Below, piece by piece: positions 1,208-40,902 of a DNA stretch of 64,000 bases (the first letter of the stretch is position 1; every line of letters begins with the position of its first letter). The notes under the pieces are model-generated. The model was not told where the DNA came from. It was given only the letters and a program-made list of their open reading frames with translations, and ran no database searches. The position numbers and the translations under genes are program-made. Where the stretch lies: NCBI RefSeq assembly GCF_000142905.1, contig NW_013657672.1, forward strand, positions 204,244 to 268,243, written 5' to 3'. Origin of the DNA: Thecamonas trahens ATCC 50062 (lineage: Eukaryota; Protista; Apusomonadida).

Positions 1208-4200
1208 CTACAGCGCCGTGAGCTCGATGCCGCCGTCGGCGTCGGTGCCGTGGGCCGCCTGGGACAGCGGCGACGGGTTGACGAGGGTCTCGGGCGTGCC
1301 GGGCGGGCCGTTATCGTCAGACGAGGACGAGGACGACGAGCTTGCGGCGGCGCCCTGGACCACTGAGCGAGCGCCAGACATGGCCGAGATGACGCGGGTA
1401 CGGGCCTGGTCAAAGAGCGAGGCGTCCTCGGGAGAGAGGGAGCCGCCCGGGGAGCAGCGTGAGACGATCGACTCAATGGTGGCGACGAGGTTACCAGCGG
1501 TCTGCTGACGGAGCGAGACGATGTCGGCGGGTGTGCCTTCCTTAGACTCAAGGAGGTCGTTGACAACCTTGAGCAGGTTGCGCTTGGTGTGGAGGAAGAG
1601 CTTGAGCTGGGCTGCCTCAAAGTGCTTCTTGGGGATCTCGACGGGCGGCGGTGCGACAAAGACGTCCATCTTGCACAGCCGCTCAAAGAGGGCGTTGACT
1701 TCGTTCTTGTTGGAGAAGATAAAGTCGTTGAGCTGCTGCATATGCTGCTCCTTGCCGCCAAACTCCTTGTTGTTGGACAGGTTCTGGAGGACCTTGCCAA
1801 CCATGATGAGCGCGCGGCGCTCGTCGGGCAGCGGGGCCTCAGAGACGAGGACGTACGACTCGGGGGCGGTAATGGCCGGGACGAGGAAGCGGAGGAAGAA
1901 GAAGCCTCCGACGGCGATCGAGTTCTGCGAGTTGGTGTGCTCTTCGAGCAGCCGGCGCGCCGCCGGCGACGTCGGGTCGAGCGCACCCTCGAGCGACTCG
2001 CACGCCGTCATCATCTTCTTGAGCTGGACGGAGAGCGTCTGCACCGTTGACGCAAACGTCTGCACGAGGCTCTGCACGGGTGCAATGACGTGCTTGAGCT
2101 GCTCGAGATCATCCGTCACGTGCTCGTCCATAAACTCAAGGTTCTGGAACGAGTCGACACCCTCCTCGTACGCCTCACGCGTCGAGTGCAGGCCGTTAAG
2201 CATCTGCGACGAGACCACTGCCGCAAGGTTCTCCATCTTGATGGGGAACTCCTCGCGGATGCACTCGCGAACAACAGCAAAGATCTGTCGGAATTGGACG
2301 GGGATGTTCTTCTCCGACCGCACAATGGCGTTAAAGATCTTCTGGCACGAGGTGAGGAGCGTGAACTTGGACCGGTTGGCGTCCGTTGCACCAGCCGCCG
2401 ACCGGAACGACCCGATGTTCTCGCCCTCCTGCACCATAATGCGATTGATGAGCACCGCAAGCGTTGCGTGCAGGTATGGGAGACCCACCATCTTGGAGTA
2501 AGCCTTGAACATCTTGGTCGCAAACGAGTTGGTCCGGAACATGGTCGACTGCGAAATCGCAGCCTTGATCTCCTTCCGCACAAAGGCCGAGAGCACCGCC
2601 ACCGTATGGTTGTCGCGCTCAAAGACGTAGATCATAGCCTTGGAAATGTCATCGGCCTCGGTCGCCTGCGTCACGTCGCACACAGCAAAGATGGCTTGCC
2701 TGTTCTCCTCCTTCAGAATGTCCATAAAGGGCCCAATGTGAGCCAGGAACGTCCGCGCGTCCTGCGGGTTCGAGAGGCCCTTGCCAAAGATCGTCTCGCG
2801 CAGCAGCGCAGGTGTCAGCTTGGGCACTTCCACCCCGTCGTTGCCGCGCCGTGTCACAAGCAGGATGACAACCGCAATGACAATCGCGAGAATGCACAGA
2901 ATGAGGACACCGCCGCCAATGGCTAGCGGCGACGTTACAAACGACGGAGACGGCGACGGCGCCGCGTCTGCACCCACAACCGTGTACACGGCAGATCCCG
3001 TCGTGTACGGCAGGCCCGTGTCGCGATACGACAGTGAGAACTGGAAGACAGAGCCGACGTCGGCCGGCGGCGAGGTGCACACCACCTCAGTCTGCGAGTT
3101 CCACGTCGACTCGTTGTACTGCGTTGTCGAGAAAACGCAGCCGTAGTTGACGCCCTCGGCAAAGTTGGTGCCGGTCACGGTGATAAGGTCCCCGCCGTCG
3201 GGCGAGCCCGACACCGGGTTGATGTTGCTGATCTCCGAGCACGCGTCTTGCGACCAGAGCGGCGACACCGTAGTCGCACCCTCGGTGCACTCAAACTGCG
3301 TCCCACAGAACGCATCACCAAAGCAGTATCCACACTCGGGCTTGCTCGACGAGAAGCACGCGTCGCATGACGACGCCGCACAGTCGTAGTACCGGAACAG
3401 CACCACAGAGCCATCTGTGTACGGCTGGCCCAGGAACTTGAGCACAACGCTGGCCCGCCCTGCCTCAGACACAGAACCTGAGATGCAGTTGATCACCTTG
3501 GGGTCCGCTGTAGACGAGGCGTTGGTCACAAAGACCGACGACGAGTCTGTAAGCGTAAACTCGCACGTGTACGCCTCGATCGGCGTCGGAAAGTCAAACT
3601 GCGACACCATTGGGATCGGGGTGCGGCCCGCAAGTGAGCCCGCGAGGTCAGTGCTAGGCTCGAGCGTCGGGCAACCAACAGTGGCGTTGAGCACCTGCTG
3701 TGTGCAGACCGGCGCCGTGTTGATGGCCCGACACGTTGAGTCGCCTTGGCACCATGTGCACTTGCCGGACTCACGGGCGTGACAACCCGAACAAGTGGTG
3801 GCAGGAAGACACGACACAACCTCCAGCTGGACCAGAATTTGCTCCGTCCACACGCTTGCGTCTGTCGAGTAGCACAGCTTGTACACGCCAGGTGTGAGGC
3901 CGAGCGAGAGCGAAGGAATGATCGTAGACGACGTAAGCGCCACTGACGACGGCGGGCTCGGCTTGCAGCTCTGCCCCATCGGAATAAACGCAGCAAGGGT
4001 CTTGGGCGTCGACACCGCGCCCACAAGCTCGATCGGCGTGGCCTCGCCCTCGCCGATGCGCGAGACCGAGAGCGCAGTCACCGTTGTGTTTGAGGTCAGC
4101 ACCACCTCGAGCTCCACATCGCCCTGAACCTCGTATGTCGACCCGCCGTCTGTCGACCAGCACACAGGGTACATGCCCGGATCGGTGAAGCCCGACGCCA

Positions 4201-7200
4201 CGCTGTACTTGGCGGGCAGGGCGGTGAGCGCCGCCGGGGCAAGCACCGTCGAGCAGTTGCCACTCGTGTCGCCGATGGCAATGTACGACGACGGTGACGG
4301 CACAGCCGAGACCGACGTCGCGTTGAGGCCAATGTCGAACGTAATCGGAACACCGACAGAGACCGTGCCTGGCGCAATCGAGAGCACGTCTTCAGACGTC
4401 GGCGCGATGACCCGCATCACCACACCCGTCGTAGTCTGCTGCACCCAGCTGGCACCGTCGTCGACCGTGTAGCAGACCTCGTACAGGCCAGGAACAGTCA
4501 TTGCGGTCGCCAGAGCAACCTTGCCGCCCACCACGTTTGACGGAGAGTAGAGCGTTTCGCCGCGCCGCGCTGCCGGTGACGAGCACGACGCACCCGAGAG
4601 CACAAACGCAACACGCGAGTCGTCCGACGGCAAAAAGTCGGCCACGCCCGCAAATGCCACCTGCACCGATGCATGATTGGCGCCAATGACCGGCGTGACC
4701 GACGTAATCGACGTCGCCTGCGCCTGGATGATGTTGATCTTGGTCGCAGACGTCTGTAGAACACGGGTCTGGAAGTTGTCCACCGTGTAGCACACAAAGA
4801 ACTCACCGGCGTTCGACAGCGGAGCAGAGGCGGGCATCGTGTTGTTGCCGTCCGGTACGACAACCGGGATCGTCTCTGCAGTCGTTGAGCAGTCCGAGGC
4901 AGTAGAGAGGAAGACAAACGAGTCGCTCGTCACCCGCAGCTGATCCAGGCCGGAGAACCGCGGCGTGGTGCCAAAACCAACCACTGTCGGCGTCAGAGAC
5001 GCCACAGAAGCCTGGGTCGCCTCGATGATGTCAAGCGACACGCCACTTTGCTGCGTCCACGTCACCTGGTTGTCCACCGAGAAGCAGACTTGGTAGGTAC
5101 CCGTCGTCGAAATGACGTCGTCCATGAACACAGAGGTAAACGACTCGGAGACGTTGATGGCACCCACCCGCTGCGTGCAGTCGATCTGCTGAGCCGAAAA
5201 CGCAATGTAGGCAAACGGTGTCGGCACAATAGAAATGACAGGCGTGGCGGGCACAAACGAGAACTGCTTGATCTGGCCCTTCGCCGCCACTGTCGGCGAA
5301 ATGCTCGTGATCGAGCCCGTCGCCGCCGTATGCACCACAATGGTCGCTCCCGACTGCTTCATCCACGGCGAGCGCGAGACACTGGGGTCCTCATTGGCGC
5401 ACACGTCGTACGCCGCAGTCTGCGCCGGGGTGATCGGCGGGAACGTGACCGCGCCTGGCGACGCGCCCACCACCACTGTTGCCACCCGCTGACTCGCCGA
5501 CGTGCAGTCCCCGTTATAGGGCACAAGCGCGAGCGACGCCGTAGGCAAGTTGAACGCCGCAGTCGTCTGCAGCCGCGGCGATGTCGACGCACCAATGTTG
5601 CTCGGAACAAAGTCCGTAGCCGACAAAAACGTCGCCTTGTAGAACGACACCGTCTGGCCAACCTGCGCAAGGGAAGAAACGCCGTCGACCGAGTAGCAGA
5701 CAGTGTACGTGTTCTCCAAAATTTCGGGAATCGCGCCCAGATCGACCGAGAGCGACGACGAGAGCGAAAACGTGACAACCTCGGTACCGCTGCACGCGCC
5801 GACCACAAGGCGCACAGCGCCAAGCGGAGTAGGGACAAGGTCGGCCCCACCCGAGAACGTCAGCGTCGCTTCAGATCCAAACGGAAGGCTCGGATGCGAG
5901 ACGGCGGTGATGGAAGTCGTCGTGGCCTCGACAACCTTGACCGTAGCACCGGGCGACGACTGGAGAATCATGTCCGCGAGCGTGGTGTAGTTGGTCGAGT
6001 AACAGATCGAGTACATGCCAACGCCCACGCCGCTGGCGAGCATCACCGGGCTCGGCGTCGCGGCACTAACCTCGGTCAGCGCCACGGCCGCATCACACGT
6101 CGACGTGGTCAGCGCAAAGTATGTGTCCGGAGTCGCGACCAGGCCCGAGATCTGAAGCTCAGGCGTAGTCGATGCACCAAATGCACTAGGCGAGACCGTG
6201 GCAATCGATGCCGGCTGCGCCGCCACCACTTCAAGCCGCGCCTCGGATGCGATCTGTTTCGTCCAGAGGTCGCCGGTGTCGTTGCGGAAGCAGGCAAAGT
6301 ACTTGCCCGGAGAAAGGATGGGCGCGCCAAGCGGCGTCGTTGTCGTCGGTGCGGTTGTGATCGCTGTGACGGCAACCGGCGCGGCACAGTCGGGCGAGAT
6401 GTCAAAGCCGAGCTGCGACGTCGACGAAATGTCACCGGTCACCTCGAGCGATGGCTGGGTGCCAGCGCCAATGATCCGCGGCGAGATCGAGACTAGCGAT
6501 GACTCGACCGGGTCCGACGTCACCTTGAGCTCGACGAGCGTCTGTGGCACAAACGTACCCGAGATGCCACTCGTCGAGTAGCAGATGTAGTGCGGCTGCA
6601 GTCGCGCAATGACCACGTTGATCGCCACCGTAGTTGTCGAGATCACATTTGTCTTGCCGAACACACTCGAGCAGTCGCGGTCAAGCGAAAGTGCTACAAA
6701 GGTCTCCGGCGACGGCACCGCACCCACAAGTTTCAGCGTCGGCTGGGTCGAGTTGAGGAACGTCGACGGCTGCAGCTCGGTGATGGCGTTGACGAGCGGA
6801 CACGCCACAGTCACCCGCGCGCCGGTCTGGCCGACATAGATCGGTGACGCTGAGATTGTGTGGTCGTTCGACAGACAGGCCTCAAACACAACGCCTGACG
6901 CGCTGCAGTCCTCAGCCTTGGGCGCGAACGTGTAGGGCTGCGAGCCGGTCAGCAGCGCTGTTGTCGTGGAAAGAAGGTTGAAGCCAGAGCCGAGGCCGTC
7001 GCACTTGCCGACCGGTGCAAAGCCGACATACCGCTGAGGTCCTGTGGAAGTTGCCTCGGTCATCTCCAGCGAGACTGTGCCCGAGCCGTGGTTCACAGGC
7101 GCACCGACAAGGGTCAGCTCGGAGGCCGCCCGGGGGCCACAAGAGTGAGGACGCGGGCAACGTCCTGAAGGTGCCACGTGGCTCCGTTGTTGACGGAGAG

Positions 7201-10018
7201 ACAGACGTAGTACGTACCTGCAGTAATGACTGCCGCGCTCTGGCGCGCAAACGTGACGCGACGCGTCGTACCGCCGGTCAGCGCCAGCGGGGCCATAAGA
7301 CTGGCACTGGCACAGCCAGATGACTCGTGAGTCTCGACAAGAGCCACCAGCAGCGAGTTGGAAAAGTATGCGTCGATGGCCGGAGCCAGCGTCACTTCGG
7401 TCGAGATCGACTTGAGGTTGGCAGGCGCCGGGATCACCGACGGAGTAAGGGTAGTGACCGAAGCCTGATCAACGTTGACAACCCGGATTTTCGACGACGA
7501 TGCCGACGAGCCCCACGTGGAGCCGCCGTCGAGCGAGTGGCAAGTCGTGTACTCGCCGGGCGACGGAAACGGCGCGCCGAGTTCGAGCGACGAGACGGCC
7601 GAGGAGATCGATATGACGTTGGTCTTGGCTCCTGTGCAGGACCCAACAGTCCATCCCAGTCTGGTGACTCCCTGTGTCGGATCGACACCGGTCAGCGCGA
7701 TGATGGTGGGCGTCTCTGAAGTGGTGACGATCAACGGCTGGAACTTGATCTCGCGGTCGATGGCCACAACCTGCAGCGTCACCGACGTCTGAACGTAGCC
7801 GGCGTCGTTGTCTCCAGCGTGTGAGACGCAGATGATGTGGGTGGTTGGCGTGGCAAAGGTGTCGCTGATGACCGCACCGTAGGCAGGGTAGGGCACTGTG
7901 TGCGACGCAGAGTCACAGCTCGCAGCAGCAAAGCGGACATACGAGTCTGGGGTCGGCACGTATGCGCCGAGCAGTTTGAGGTTGACAGCCACGTCCTCAC
8001 CGACCACGGCAGGCACCACCGCATCAAACTCATCAGGCATGGACTTGACGATTTTGACCTGGAGATTAGCAGTCAGCTGGCGGACCCACGTCGGCTGGTC
8101 AAACGACCTAACGCACACCACATAGTCGCCAAGCGGTAGCGTCGACGGCAGAGCAAAGCCGGTTGTCGTCGCGCCCGCGAGCGAAAAAGCAGTGGCACAG
8201 AGCCGCAGTCGCTCGGGGAGAGGCCCCACTCGAGCCCAGGATACGTGTCCTCCGCCGAGATGGAGCCGTCAAAAGAGAGAGAAAACGAAACGTCGGTCCG
8301 GTCCAAGGTTTGGTAGAGCCCGACCACCGCCGGCGAGACTCCGGTGATGAACAGCGAGTCAACGTCCTTGGCGGTAGCGTACTTGAACACATTGCTCAGG
8401 ACAGTCGAGCCCGCGGGAGTAAGCACCTCGGCAGTCTCTTCAACGGCAAAGAAGATGTTGCGCGACTGGGCTTGGAAGTCGATCCCGTCGATGCTCCGCG
8501 AAAACTGAAGATCGTTCTTGTTGTACACTCCAAGTCGCGAGTTGCCCGAGCCGTCATGCAGAACCGAGGTGTAGCCTGTCCCAGGGTTGGAGATCGAGCA
8601 CGGCGAGTCGGAGCCGGTGGCAAACAGGTCGTAAGGGCCCGGGCTGTCCAGGCCGGCCAATAGCGGGTGATCAGTCAACTTGACAGAATCCGTGGCGGTG
8701 CAAGGGCCAATGTTGGCCCAGTACATCCACGGCGCAACATCCTTGTTGAGGAGGACAACCGGAATGGTGGCATCGCGGAAGAGGCCCTGAAGATCATGGG
8801 GTTCGCTTGCAGACACTGGCTGGGCGATTGACGACGAGATGACGATGCCGACCTTGTTGTTCGCATGATACGTCCCAACCCAGTCGGCACTCACCACGTA
8901 CACCGAGTAGCCCTGGGCAACAAGGTGATCATAGACCAGCTTGTCAGCCTTGGCGAACGAGGGGTTCGCGACAGAACCAACGGTCCAAACGTTCTCCTCG
9001 GACCCAACAACCATCAGCCACTCTCCGCGCGGCGCAGGAGTCGTGCAGGACGGCCCCGACCAGCCCGGCAAGCACTTGTGGCAGACATCGTGAACGCCGA
9101 CACCGCTTGCACACAGCTCACAGTTGACCACGTTGCACGTCTTTCGAGCAGTGCAGAACTCAATAGTGAACTTGTCGCCCAGCCCGCTTTGATGAAACAC
9201 GTCTTGCGACGGGTTGTACGCGAAAGCACGCGCATTGGACAAGTCTGGCTGCGAATCGCTAAAGTCCAGACCTTCTGCCGGTGTACCATCCAGCCAGATG
9301 AAGCCAGTAGAGAGCTGAATGTCAAAGATGAGCCCCGTCCACAACTCGCCACTGAAGGCGAGACCGGATGACAGGAACCGCTTACGATAGCCACGCGTCG
9401 GCAGTGTCACTAAATATCCACCCTGGGCATCACATTCGGCTGCCGCGTCCGCGAAGTCGTCGTTGTTGTATCTGGCGAAAACACAAACTCCTGGTGTCAA
9501 CTCAACCGCTGGTCCAGAACAAGATTGGTCAGCGAAGACAGACGACGGCAAACAGGTTGCAAGTGCAGCCACGATCACACTGATGTCCGTCCCAGGAGAA
9601 CCGTTGATGTGAGTTATGTGCCTCGCCAACGCACAAAAATGAACAACCAACGGAATGTGGACGACCAGGCGGCGAAAAGGCCTTTTCCTTCCGCTTGCGA
9701 AAAAAAAGCCCAGCCCAACCACCGCCAACACGCGTGTTCCCCCACCACCGACCGGGGACCGTGGGGGAGGGGGAAGGGGTGGTATTGAGGGTGCTTCCGG
9801 AATAAGAACGAACGGTAGACAATGCAAAGATACAGCAATGGGTTGATTGTATCTGTGTATGGAGGGGGGGGGGGGGAGGGAGGGGGGGAGGGGAGGGGGG
9901 GGGGGGCATGGCCAGGGCAGAGCTTTGCCTTGCAGCAACGACCGATCTTTGCAGGCAAGGAGGCACAGGAAGTAAGCACGGGGGTAGCGTACCCAAAGAG
10001 CGACAAGGCCACCTTCAT
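1208..10018 (-). CDS. Giant single-pass plexin-like receptor (~2800 aa): signal peptide, C-type lectin, EGF, uncharacterised domain, ~15 Ig-like repeats, 2x PSI/IPT, TM, RasGAP; exons 10018-9993 and 9579-1208 with two apparent -1 frameshifts (~8195, ~7130)
   Basis: Intron 9992-9580 (gtacgc...cag) yields signal peptide MKVALSLFGVIVAALATCLPSSVFA. CTLD: FADAAAECDAQGGYLVTL, LWTGL, FIWLDG. EGF: CHKCLPGWSGPSC. PSI: CSGCH..CTWCQGDSTC and CDACF..CGYCFGDAFC. IPT: ISNINPVSGSPDGGDLITVTGTNF. TM at ~2925-2856. RasGAP motifs: MFRTNSFATK, GFFFLRFLVPAI, KVLQNLSN, KEQHMQQLNDFI. Confidence 0.85.
3820..8350 (-). repeat. About 15 tandem ~100-aa two-cysteine beta-rich (IPT/Ig-like) protein repeats
   Basis: Recurring (I/V)xx(V/I)SP...C...GxYxxC(Y/F/W)SxDxGxTWxxQ, e.g. 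PGEYTTCHSLDGGSTW, TGTYQVCFSVDNQVTW, PGLYEVCYTVDDGASW, PGMYPVCWSTDGGSTY. Confidence 0.8.
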
Positions 10019-10349
10019 GGTGTAGAGCGAGTCAGCACGTCACGTTGACAAGAAGGGGCGGGGGTGGAAAAGGGGTGGGAAAAGGGGGGGGGGGGGGGGG
10101 CGGGAATGCGTAAGGTGGGTGTGGGTGTAGGTGCTTGAGAGTCGTGTAGCCTAATGCGGCAGGTTGCCGCTGCTAGCGCCCAAGATTGTCCACGCTGGGA
10201 TGGCCTGAGGCAAATTGGTAGAACTGTCGAGTGGTCAAGGATTCTGCACGGCTGCCGAGTTCCGGGCAAACAAAGTTGAGCGCAGACGCGGTGGGGAGCA
10301 GAAGGGGGAAAAATACGTTTACTTGGTCAGCAAGCACTCCAGCGGTACA

Positions 10350-40802: not shown

Positions 40803-40902
40803 NNNNNNNNNNNNNNNNNNNNNNNNNNNNNNNNNNNNNNNNNNNNNNNNNNNNNNNNNNNNNNNNNNNNNNNNNNNNNNNNNNNNNNNNNNNNNNNNNN
40901 NN
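40803..40902. other. Assembly gap (100 N)
   Basis: Run of N. Confidence 1.

What the first reader, a model, noticed from the sequence alone, without database searches (positions are those of the whole stretch)
1208..10018. Sema-less plexin-like receptor coupling a C-type lectin to a RasGAP
Seen in sequence: one intron and two single-base repairs join three ORFs into a ~2800-aa type I receptor (signal peptide, CTLD, EGF, unknown domain, 15 Ig-like repeats, PSI-IPT-PSI-IPT, TM, RasGAP with intact arginine finger FRTNS and FLR motif). Established: PSI/IPT stalk plus TM plus RasGAP is the plexin architecture, but plexins sense semaphorins through an N-terminal Sema propeller. Inference: here a lectin on a very long stalk replaces Sema, giving a candidate glycan (prey or substrate) sensor that switches off Ras/Rap GTPases. 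It may be a proto-plexin or a convergent assembly. Automated annotation would probably fragment it.
Basis: partly seen in the sequence, partly recalled or inferred. Interest (0 to 1): 0.85.

Follow-up and report, generated by a model that had tools for sequence, protein, structure and literature searches.

The report
Lectin-headed membrane receptor with RasGAP
The protist Thecamonas trahens encodes here a roughly 2,800-residue cell-surface receptor with a lectin-like head, a long repeat stalk with a plexin-like base and an ordinary Ras-inactivating enzyme inside the cell, one of a previously undescribed group of membrane-spanning RasGAPs that bears on how animal plexins arose.

Summary
On the minus strand, 10018..1211, one 413-nt GT-AG intron and two one-base frame breaks join three open frames. 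The result is about 2,799 codons. It reads signal peptide, divergent C-type-lectin-like domain, EGF-like motif, unknown domain, 15 two-Cys repeats, PSI-IPT-PSI-IPT, TM, then RasGAP with an intact Arg finger and FLR motif.

Both breaks sit in two of only five homopolymer runs of 5 or more in 8.4 kb. Repeat spacing is normal across them. Homologues from an environmental scaffold are single open frames of 2,763-2,789 aa. Assembly error is therefore likelier than decay, but no reads could be checked.

"Plexin-like" is true of the design only:
- The PSI-IPT stalk finds plexin-A ectodomains best (family profile 1e-23).
- The GAP is classical: NF1 3e-34, p120GAP Z 30.
- There is no Plexin_cytopl match and no Sema. 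The GAP insert is a helical hairpin, not a Rho-binding domain.

In a GAP-domain tree the gene falls in a well-supported clade (98/98). It holds at least 10 Thecamonas genes plus Gocevia and Mastigamoeba proteins. All have a TM about 90 aa upstream of the GAP and differ in their ectodomains.

Glycan sensing is unproven. The scan found this family before on other DNA of this genome (s1-746496, s1-758354).

The parts
9993..10018 (-). Exon 1: ATG plus 26 nt, coding the first 9 residues of the signal peptide (last codon split)
   Evidence: Read from the sequence. The only Met that gives exon 2 a signal peptide.
9580..9992 (-). Intron, 413 nt, GT..AG, rich in C/CT tracts, with a TAAC-containing branch-like site about 35 nt before the AG
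   Evidence: Inferred from frame and signal-peptide logic. No RNA evidence was available.
9531..9579 (-). Rest of the signal peptide (cleavage predicted after ..SSVFA)
9153..9524 (-). Divergent C-type-lectin-like domain (WTGL and W.DG motifs; QPD present; WND replaced by LGD)
   Evidence: Pfam Lectin_C 18.2 bits, below cut-off. PDB: mannose receptor CTLD 1.4e-8, MRC2 6e-6. Library hits are bona fide multi-CTLD proteins.
9045..9137 (-). EGF-like six-Cys motif
   Evidence: Cys pattern. Pfam EGF_Teneurin only E 0.21.
8364..9026 (-). Unknown domain of about 220 aa, alternating strand/helix prediction. One bacterial Big_7 protein (P0022) matches part of it.
   Evidence: No Pfam or PDB sequence match.
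3812..8351 (-). 15 tandem two-Cys repeats of about 95-110 aa, presumably beta-rich, with no Pfam name
   Evidence: Cys spacing and alignment. An HMM of the unit finds 13-17 matches (whole or split units) in each paralogue locus and 14-15 units in the environmental proteins.
8184..8188 (-). Frame break 1: T5 run inside repeat 1. The downstream frame follows if the run is one base longer.
   Evidence: Cys1-Cys2 spacing across it is 31, within the normal range of 29-37.
7129..7136 (-). Frame break 2: C5G3 run at the boundary of repeats 4 and 5. The frame-1 stop follows 5 codons later (7116-7114).
   Evidence: The paralogue P0020 ends at the equivalent point.
3668..3811 (-). PSI domain 1 (8 Cys)
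   Evidence: Aligns with PSI2 of Plexin-A2.
3386..3667 (-). IPT-like domain 1
   Evidence: Collinear alignment with Plexin-A2 residues 624-853.
3239..3382 (-). PSI domain 2 (8 Cys)
2975..3232 (-). IPT/TIG domain 2
   Evidence: Pfam TIG 1.5e-10.
2855..2926 (-). Transmembrane helix followed by TRRG (positive inside)
2243..2854 (-). Juxtamembrane segment and N-terminal part of the RasGAP domain. The Arg-finger motif FRTNS has its Arg codon at 2536-2534.
1931..2242 (-). Insert of about 104 aa in the GAP domain, predicted as an antiparallel helical hairpin
   Evidence: The NF1 alignment is interrupted between NF1 chain residues 170 and 171. AF2 helices 206-244 and 249-290. Matched only by coiled-coil hairpins.
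1670..1930 (-). C-terminal part of the RasGAP domain with the FLR motif (Arg codon 1891-1889)
1208..1669 (-). C-terminal helices, a disordered Ser-rich tail ending ..ELTAL, and the stop codon at 1210-1208

Best explanation
This is one gene of Thecamonas trahens encoding a type I receptor of about 2,800 aa. From outside to inside it has a lectin-like head, an EGF-like motif, an unknown domain, a stalk of 15 two-Cys repeats on a plexin-type PSI-IPT-PSI-IPT base, one membrane helix and a classical, catalytically competent-looking RasGAP domain.

It belongs to a clade of membrane-spanning RasGAPs. The clade shares a TM-juxtamembrane-GAP cassette and swaps ectodomains. It is found in this apusomonad and in Amoebozoa.

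The two frame breaks are most likely one-base undercalls of homopolymers in the assembly.

Inferred mechanism: a ligand or surface bound by the ectodomain changes the clustering or conformation of the receptor, and so changes the access of the GAP to membrane-bound Ras/Rap-GTP. This switches the GTPase off locally, for example during gliding, adhesion or prey capture. The helical hairpin inserted in the GAP is a candidate regulatory or dimerisation element.

The domain content and the family relations are shown. The ligand, the substrate GTPase and the mode of regulation are inferred.
For: Gene anatomy:
- Domain hits and motifs.
- The GAP domain matches NF1 at 7.8e-22 and p120GAP at about 5e-20 by sequence, and at 3e-34 and 2e-31 with the family profile.
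- The AF2 model (pLDDT 75) superposes on p120GAP at Foldseek TM 0.82 and VIA Z 30.
- The PSI-IPT base matches Plexin-A2 at 1.1e-14. The family profile matches Plexin-A1 at 1e-23, against 7e-8 for Met.

One gene rather than three:
- The repeat array runs through both breaks with normal Cys spacing.
- Repeat 5 starts right after break 2, upstream of the annotated Met. Frame 0 has no Met between its upstream stop and that Met.
- Two of the only five homopolymer runs of 5 or more in 8.4 kb of coding sequence are the break sites.
- Environmental homologues P0002, P0003 and P0005 are single ORFs of 2,763-2,789 aa with 14-15 repeats. P0003 and P0005 begin with hydrophobic, signal-peptide-like N-termini; P0002 does not.
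- P0003 and P0005 run collinearly across one-base frame switches in the T. trahens paralogues on C37.

Family:
- At least 7 TIG-TM-RasGAP paralogues are present in the genome.
- In the GAP tree the 9 repeat-stalk receptors form a clade (97/96) inside a 14-row clade (98/98). That clade also holds Gocevia and Mastigamoeba TM proteins and three T. trahens genes with FN3, Cys-rich/TIG or other ectodomains.
- Every member has a TM about 85-95 aa before the GAP and a similar juxtamembrane layout. RasGAPs outside the clade have no TM.
Against: - Real frameshifts, and so a pseudogene, cannot be excluded.
- One paralogue (C12) has a genuine-looking 4-nt deletion relative to its near-identical copy, and C46 has in-frame TGA stops. 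Some family members may therefore be decaying.
- The short paralogue P0020 ends exactly where frame 1 ends here.
- No independent protein or contig covering piece B was found.
- The intron is inferred from sequence logic only.
- The ligand, the GTPase substrate and regulation by clustering have no direct evidence. The complex predictor was unavailable.
Confidence: 0.6

Rival explanations
1. The frameshifts are real. The locus is then either a recently inactivated receptor gene, or it now yields only a short secreted product. As assembled, translation from the ATG ends at 8076. With only break 1 being an error, the product would be a secreted head-plus-4-repeats protein of about 830 aa, like P0020.
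For: P0020 on contig C26 is an independent gene of 817 aa (signal peptide, lectin-like head, 4 repeats). It ends with TAA at the point equivalent to break 2, with nothing receptor-like downstream. Other family copies show a 4-nt deletion and in-frame stops.
Against: 350 and 1,973 codons stay open downstream of the breaks. Both breaks need the same change, one more base in a run of five. Every T. trahens copy examined is interrupted by a frame switch, an in-frame stop or, in C35, a 100-N scaffold gap, whereas all environmental homologues are intact. This fits an assembly error profile better than parallel decay.
Confidence: 0.2
2. It is a true relative of plexins. The whole PSI-IPT-TM-GAP chassis descends from the same ancestral receptor as plexins. 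Plexins later gained Sema and the Rho-binding insert, and their GAP diverged.
For: The module order is the same. The stalk base hits plexin-A best in the PDB. Plexin cytoplasmic structures superpose at Z 26 over 333-343 residues, and those alignments start at model residues 1-9 in the juxtamembrane part, against residues 27-38 for p120GAP, SynGAP and NF1. In both, the GAP is split by an insert. The design occurs in Apusomonadida and Amoebozoa, so it predates Choanozoa.
Against: The GAP sequence is much closer to NF1/p120GAP (20-25% identity) than to plexin (10-12%). There is no Plexin_cytopl match. The insert has a different fold, and apparently a different site (the site is from memory of plexin numbering and was not tested). 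PSI-IPT arrays also occur in unrelated protist and bacterial proteins. The PDB holds few PSI-IPT proteins other than plexin and Met, which biases the 'best hit'.
Confidence: 0.2
3. There are two separate genes as annotated: an upstream secreted lectin-repeat protein, and a downstream 1,951-aa protein starting at the Met codon 7063-7061.
For: The public gene model is 1,951 aa. P0020 shows that the upstream part can exist alone.
Against: The downstream product would lack a signal peptide and start in the middle of repeat 5. The 22 codons (7129-7064) between break 2 and that Met align with the first strand of the repeat. Only about 50 nt separate the upstream stop from the Met. Full-length homologues are single ORFs.
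Confidence: 0.05

Closest known systems
Plexins (animals and choanoflagellates)
   Same: Type I receptor with PSI-IPT modules next to the membrane, a single TM, a juxtamembrane segment and a RasGAP-fold domain interrupted by an insert. The stalk base has significant sequence similarity to plexin-A ectodomains.
   Different: No Sema domain. The head is lectin-like, and the stalk is mostly 15 unnamed two-Cys repeats. The GAP is of the classical p120GAP/NF1 type, with no Plexin_cytopl profile match. The insert is a helical hairpin, not a ubiquitin-like Rho-binding domain.
p120GAP (RASA1) and neurofibromin GAP-related domain
   Same: Best sequence and structure matches. Arg finger FRxNS, the FLR motif and the downstream K..QNLSN region are all conserved.
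   Different: Those are cytosolic multidomain proteins. Here the GAP is tethered to a membrane helix about 80 aa upstream and carries a helical insert of about 104 aa just before the FLR helix.
Thecamonas trahens AMSG_07818 and AMSG_07816 (uncharacterised 'Ras-GAP domain-containing proteins')
   Same: Paralogues in the same genome (37-40% identity in the cytoplasmic part) with the same repeats, PSI, TIG, TM and split RasGAP.
   Different: Their heads differ. Their public models are also N-terminally truncated by frame switches.
Gocevia fonbrunei EP01089_P001501 and Mastigamoeba balamuthi m51a1_g8516
   Same: Signal peptide, ectodomain (PSI plus TIG in Gocevia), TM and RasGAP. They fall in the same well-supported GAP clade and share the juxtamembrane layout.
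   Different: No insert in the GAP domain, no two-Cys repeats and no lectin-like head.
Mannose-receptor-family C-type lectin domains
   Same: The N-terminal half of the head domain aligns significantly (1.4e-8), including the WIGL-type core motif.
   Different: Below the Pfam threshold. The second disulphide and the WND calcium-site motif are missing. The sugar-binding loop cannot be aligned.

Membership tests
Plexin | N-terminal Sema propeller | tested here: not met
   No Sema hit in any piece. None in the whole genome at E<=1, though that search had no positive control.
Plexin | PSI-IPT stalk next to the membrane | tested here: met
   TIG 1.5e-10 and two 8-Cys PSI patterns. Plexin-A2 1.1e-14. 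Family profile against Plexin-A1 1e-23.
Plexin | Plexin-type cytoplasmic domain (PF08337) | tested here: not met
   No hit at E<=10 in the protein or in the genome. No plexin cytoplasmic chain found by the family profile at E<=10.
Plexin | Rho-GTPase-binding (ubiquitin-like) domain inserted in the GAP | tested here: not met
   The insert is predicted as two long antiparallel helices and matches only coiled-coil hairpins.
Plexin | Dimerisation-activated, Rap-specific GAP activity | not testable with these tools
   The complex predictor was unavailable. This needs biochemistry.
Classical RasGAP (PF00616) | Profile match above the curated cut-off | tested here: met
   93.6 bits against a cut-off of 28.3.
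Classical RasGAP (PF00616) | Arginine finger (FRxxS) and FLR motif | tested here: met
   FRTNS and FFFLRF are present and invariant in 9 family members.
Classical RasGAP (PF00616) | RasGAP helical fold | tested here: met
   AF2 pLDDT 75. p120GAP TM 0.82. Z 30.0, rmsd 2.8 over 322 residues.
Classical RasGAP (PF00616) | Stimulates GTP hydrolysis on Ras/Rap | not testable with these tools
   Needs an enzyme assay.
C-type lectin-like domain (PF00059) | Profile match above the curated cut-off | tested here: not met
   18.2 bits against a cut-off of 22.6. Only profile positions 4-64 of 107 are matched.
C-type lectin-like domain (PF00059) | Significant similarity to bona fide CTLDs | tested here: met
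   Mannose receptor 1.4e-8 and MRC2 6e-6. Library hits down to 1.8e-7; all 8 of those scanned against Pfam that align to this region are multi-CTLD proteins.
C-type lectin-like domain (PF00059) | Calcium/sugar site (EPN or QPD plus WND) | tested here: inconclusive
   QPD is present, but WND reads LGD. The paralogue P0020 has no QPD. The loop is not alignable.
C-type lectin-like domain (PF00059) | CTLD fold | tested here: inconclusive
   The AF2 model of the head has pLDDT 42 and is unusable.
Receptor-type (membrane-spanning) RasGAP clade, unnamed | GAP domain falls in the clade | tested here: met
   14-row clade with 98/98 support, and an inner 9-row clade with 97/96.
Receptor-type (membrane-spanning) RasGAP clade, unnamed | Single TM about 85-95 aa upstream of the GAP core, with a shared juxtamembrane layout | tested here: met

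The most novel reading that the evidence does not exclude
The TM-juxtamembrane-RasGAP cassette on a PSI-IPT stalk is the ancestral chassis from which plexins were built. Receptor-GAP signalling would then date back to the common ancestor of Amoebozoa, apusomonads and opisthokonts. Plexins would be this receptor plus a Sema head and a Rho-binding insert, rather than a fresh shuffle of separate domains in the choanozoan ancestor.
Probability: 0.2. Interest if true: 0.85.

Novelty: new variant of a known kind. Interest (0 to 1): 0.6.

Why it matters
Plexins are the only described receptors that carry a RasGAP-fold enzyme. They are regarded as an invention of the animal-choanoflagellate ancestor, made by shuffling Sema with pre-existing PSI, IPT and RasGAP domains (PMC6374515, PMC8011033).

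Here a free-living apusomonad has a whole family of membrane-spanning RasGAPs, at least 10 genes. Some stand on a plexin-type PSI-IPT stalk, and relatives occur in Amoebozoa. I found no paper describing them.

If the family is functional, direct receptor-to-Ras/Rap inactivation is an old and modular signalling design in amoeboid and gliding protists. It would also make the origin of plexins testable by phylogeny and biochemistry.

It shows too that the public T. trahens gene models for this family are truncated by assembly indels.

Tried and rejected
- Complex prediction (homodimer of the cytoplasmic part) was unavailable.
- The protein-atlas search was busy twice.
- The AlphaFold model of the head (lectin-like, EGF-like and unknown domains) came out at pLDDT 42. 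It was not used for fold search, so the fold of the unknown domain and of the CTLD remains untested.
- The search of the 5.8-billion-protein set with piece B (350 aa), meant to find independent contigs spanning the breaks, found nothing.
- The search with the PSI-IPT region, meant to fetch plexins for a joint GAP tree, returned only TIG-rich proteins from a bacterial MAG, Phytophthora and JGI records. No plexin sequence was therefore available, and the plexin-versus-receptor-clade phylogeny could not be run.
- Short introns as the cause of the frame changes: rejected. Repeat lengths and Cys spacing are normal across both sites, so no sequence is missing.
- Two programmed -1 frameshift sites: considered and judged unlikely. 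Neither site has a canonical slippery heptamer, and two such sites in one gene would be unusual.
- Homopolymers are not the cause of every frame switch in the paralogues. One switch is a 100-N scaffold gap.
- Paper searches for transmembrane or receptor RasGAP, and for Thecamonas plus plexin or RasGAP, found nothing relevant.
The pieces were searched apart, by reference. A joined reading with X at each break was used only inside local scripts, for coordinates, repeat analysis and local BLAST.
Full report
**What is in the sequence**

The region is GC-rich (about 0.6). On the minus strand it carries three long stop-to-stop open frames: 10031->8076 (652 codons), 8268->7117 (384) and 7468->1211 (2086). 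They overlap by 193 and 352 nt.

An ATG at 10018 opens 26 nt of coding sequence. It is followed by GT at 9992-9991. An AG at 9581-9580 precedes exon 2, which starts at 9579. Splicing yields a clean 25-residue signal peptide and then DQSC. Nothing else upstream supplies a Met for exon 2.

The first frame change lies at a T5 run (8188-8184). The second lies at a C5 run followed by G3 (7136-7129). In both, the downstream frame is reached if the run is one base longer. Read this way the product is about 2,799 residues.

**Domains**

- Pfam finds RasGAP (2e-26, 93.6 bits) and TIG (1.5e-10). PSI is weak in this copy (E 0.49) and Lectin_C is below threshold (18.2 against 22.6 bits).
- The PSI calls are backed by two 8-Cys patterns. 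Homologues also give significant PSI hits.
- The lectin-like domain is backed by reciprocal similarity: mannose receptor CTLD 1.4e-8 and MRC2 6e-6 in the PDB. Whole-library hits reach 1.8e-7, and the eight of them checked against Pfam that align to this region are all multi-CTLD proteins.
- Only its N-terminal 60% aligns. A QPD tripeptide sits where a sugar-site motif would be. However, WND reads LGD, the second disulphide is absent, and the paralogue P0020 lacks QPD. The fold could not be checked because the head model has pLDDT 42.
- Between the head and the PSI-IPT base lie 15 repeats of about 100 aa with two conserved Cys. They have no Pfam or PDB sequence match.
- The EGF-like call rests on the Cys pattern alone.
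- The domain of about 220 aa after it remains unknown. One bacterial Big_7 protein matches part of it.

**One gene or several, and are the breaks real?**

For one gene:

- The repeat array is continuous through both breaks. Cys1-Cys2 spacing across break 1 is 31 (range 29-37). Cys2-Cys1 spacing across break 2 is 67 (range 64-76). No sequence is missing, so introns are excluded.
- Repeat 5 begins immediately after break 2. The public gene model (P0001, 1,951 aa) starts at a Met in the middle of that repeat and has no signal peptide. Frame 0 has no earlier Met.
- In 8.4 kb of coding sequence there are only five homopolymer runs of 5 or more, and two of them are the break sites.
- The genome is that of Thecamonas trahens.
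- An environmental scaffold (ERZ23486198) carries two tandem intact ORFs of 2,787 and 2,789 aa. A third homologue, P0005 (2,763 aa), is known from ENA without a fetched contig. These three have 14-15 of the same repeats. P0003 and P0005 start with hydrophobic, signal-peptide-like N-termini; P0002 does not.
- P0002 is 96-100% identical to three T. trahens copies. P0003 and P0005 run collinearly across one-base frame switches in the two copies on C37.
- So every T. trahens copy I examined is interrupted by a frame switch, an in-frame stop or, in C35, a 100-N scaffold gap, while every environmental homologue is open. This fits assembly indels better than parallel decay.

Against:

- I could not look at reads.
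- One paralogue has a real-looking 4-nt deletion, and another has in-frame TGA stops.
- P0020, an independent 817-aa gene on C26, consists of signal peptide, the same head and 4 repeats. It ends exactly at the point equivalent to break 2.

I put an intact single gene at about 0.6 and a real frameshift or short product at about 0.2.

**Is it a plexin?**

Ectodomain base:

- The PSI-IPT-PSI-IPT segment aligns collinearly over about 220 residues with PSI2-IPT2-PSI3 of Plexin-A2 (1.1e-14).
- The family profile finds Plexin-A1 at 1e-23, A2 and A4 at about 1e-21 and fly PlexA at 4e-11. Met comes in at 7e-8.
- The PDB holds few other PSI-IPT proteins, and similar TIG arrays occur in a Phytophthora protein and a bacterial MAG protein. 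This shows plexin-type modules, not orthology.

Cytoplasmic part:

- By sequence the nearest structures are NF1 (7.8e-22; 3e-34 with the profile), p120GAP and SynGAP, followed at much weaker E-values by IQGAP. No plexin cytoplasmic chain appears at E<=10.
- Plexin_cytopl (PF08337) matches neither the protein nor the genome.
- The AF2 model (pLDDT 75) superposes best on p120GAP: Foldseek 9e-9, TM 0.82, with plexin A3 at rank 26.
- By VIA-align the figures are p120GAP Z 30.0, SynGAP 27.1, plexin-B1 26.6 and NF1 26.6. Sequence identity is 20-25% to the classical GAPs and 10-12% to plexins.
- The plexin alignments start nearer the N-terminus of the model, at residues 1-9 in the juxtamembrane part. 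The p120GAP, SynGAP and NF1 alignments start at residues 27-38. This is a weak hint only.
- The GAP is split by about 104 residues, which fold as an antiparallel helical hairpin. It is not a ubiquitin-like Rho-binding domain.
- From memory of plexin-B1 numbering, the insert also sits closer to the FLR helix than the plexin insert does. I did not test that.
- The genome has no Sema match (no positive control).

Verdict: it works and is built like a plexin, but it fails two defining plexin features.

**The family**

- The genome holds 55 RasGAP-profile matches.
- At least seven loci have TIG directly upstream of a RasGAP closely related to this one. Five carry the same two-Cys repeats. One, on C8 at 460 kb, has PSI plus three TIG instead.
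- In a maximum-likelihood tree of 28 GAP domains the nine repeat-stalk or PSI-TIG receptors form a clade (97/96). It lies inside a 14-row clade (98/98).
- That larger clade adds a Gocevia fonbrunei protein (signal peptide, PSI, TIG, TM, RasGAP) and a Mastigamoeba balamuthi protein (signal peptide, EGF-like, TM, RasGAP). It also adds three more T. trahens genes, whose ectodomains are FN3 repeats, TIG plus Cys-rich repeats, or unnamed repeats.
- Every member has a membrane helix 85-95 aa upstream of the GAP core and a similar juxtamembrane layout. The T. trahens RasGAPs outside the clade have none.
- This is a receptor-type RasGAP group with swapped ectodomains. Plexin GAPs could not be placed in the tree, because no plexin sequence could be obtained with the tools.

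**Mechanism**

- Shown: a secretory signal, a very long modular ectodomain, one TM with positive-inside topology, and a GAP domain whose catalytic Arg finger, FLR motif and surrounding residues are invariant across nine family members.
- Inferred: binding at the head or along the stalk changes clustering or orientation. The membrane-tethered GAP then inactivates Ras/Rap-type GTPases locally, as plexins do on dimerisation (PMC3787391, PMC8011033). The conserved hairpin insert may regulate or dimerise the enzyme.
- A role in prey or substrate sensing is plausible for a gliding bacterivore but has no direct support.

**Literature and earlier notes**

- Plexins are described as a Choanozoa novelty, assembled from pre-existing separate domains. 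The surveys were Sema-based (PMC6374515, PMC8011033, PMC6792448).
- I found no paper on membrane-spanning RasGAPs or on these Thecamonas genes.
- The scan has already met this family on other DNA of the same genome. Note s1-746496 has a follow-up that reached the same reading, and s1-758354 is a first-reader note. My tests were made independently on this locus.

**Constraints**

The pieces were searched apart, by reference.
- The complex predictor and the Atlas were unavailable.

Noticed in passing
G000 contig C26:265352-267805 (L018:2352-4805): P0020 is an independent 817-aa secreted paralogue: signal peptide, the same lectin-like head, EGF-like motif and unknown domain, then 4 two-Cys repeats. 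It is 35% identical to the first 823 residues of this receptor. It ends with TAA exactly at the point of frame break 2 and has no TM. It could be a soluble decoy or a partial duplicate.
   Followed up: partly
G000 C12:196000-205999, C35:260500-270499, C46:14500-24499 (L009, L011, L012): Three copies of one receptor-RasGAP gene are 96-98% identical in DNA over 5.5-6.8 kb and diverge upstream. C12 has a 4-nt deletion, C46 has in-frame TGA stops, and C35 is interrupted by a 100-N gap. They are either recent duplicates or separately assembled haplotypes.
   Followed up: partly
L019 (ENA ERZ23486198, scaffold_187, 18.8 kb): A metagenome scaffold carries two tandem intact receptor-RasGAP ORFs (2,787 and 2,789 aa). 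One is 96-100% identical to T. trahens copies, so a Thecamonas-like organism is present in that sample. It gives an error-free reference for the family.
   Followed up: partly
G000 C15:255062-258616 (L006), C16:153447-156965 (L007), C40:72500-82499 (L015): Further membrane-spanning RasGAPs have other ectodomains: FN3 repeats (C15), unnamed repeats (C16), and TIG plus many Cys-rich disintegrin-like repeats (C40). They fall in the same GAP clade.
   Followed up: partly
window 1211-1225 and the C-termini of P0002, P0003 and P0004: Four family members end in a similar C-terminal motif (..TAL, ..KEL, ..VEL, ..VEL). It may be a short docking motif such as a PDZ ligand. Plexin-B also ends in a PDZ ligand. 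Three residues are weak evidence.
   Followed up: no
window 40803-40902: A run of 100 N marks a scaffold gap inside the window. The same kind of gap interrupts paralogue C35 and lies just upstream of P0020.
   Followed up: no
G000 C8:468556-470499 (L014:8057-10000, minus strand): A tubulin-tyrosine-ligase family ORF (TTL, 3e-59) lies about 2.5 kb upstream of the PSI-3xTIG receptor-RasGAP on the same strand.
   Followed up: no
window 10040-10140 and 9780-9910: Long poly-C and CT-rich tracts lie in the 5' flank and in the first intron of the gene. Both are low-complexity and pyrimidine-rich on the coding strand.
   Followed up: no
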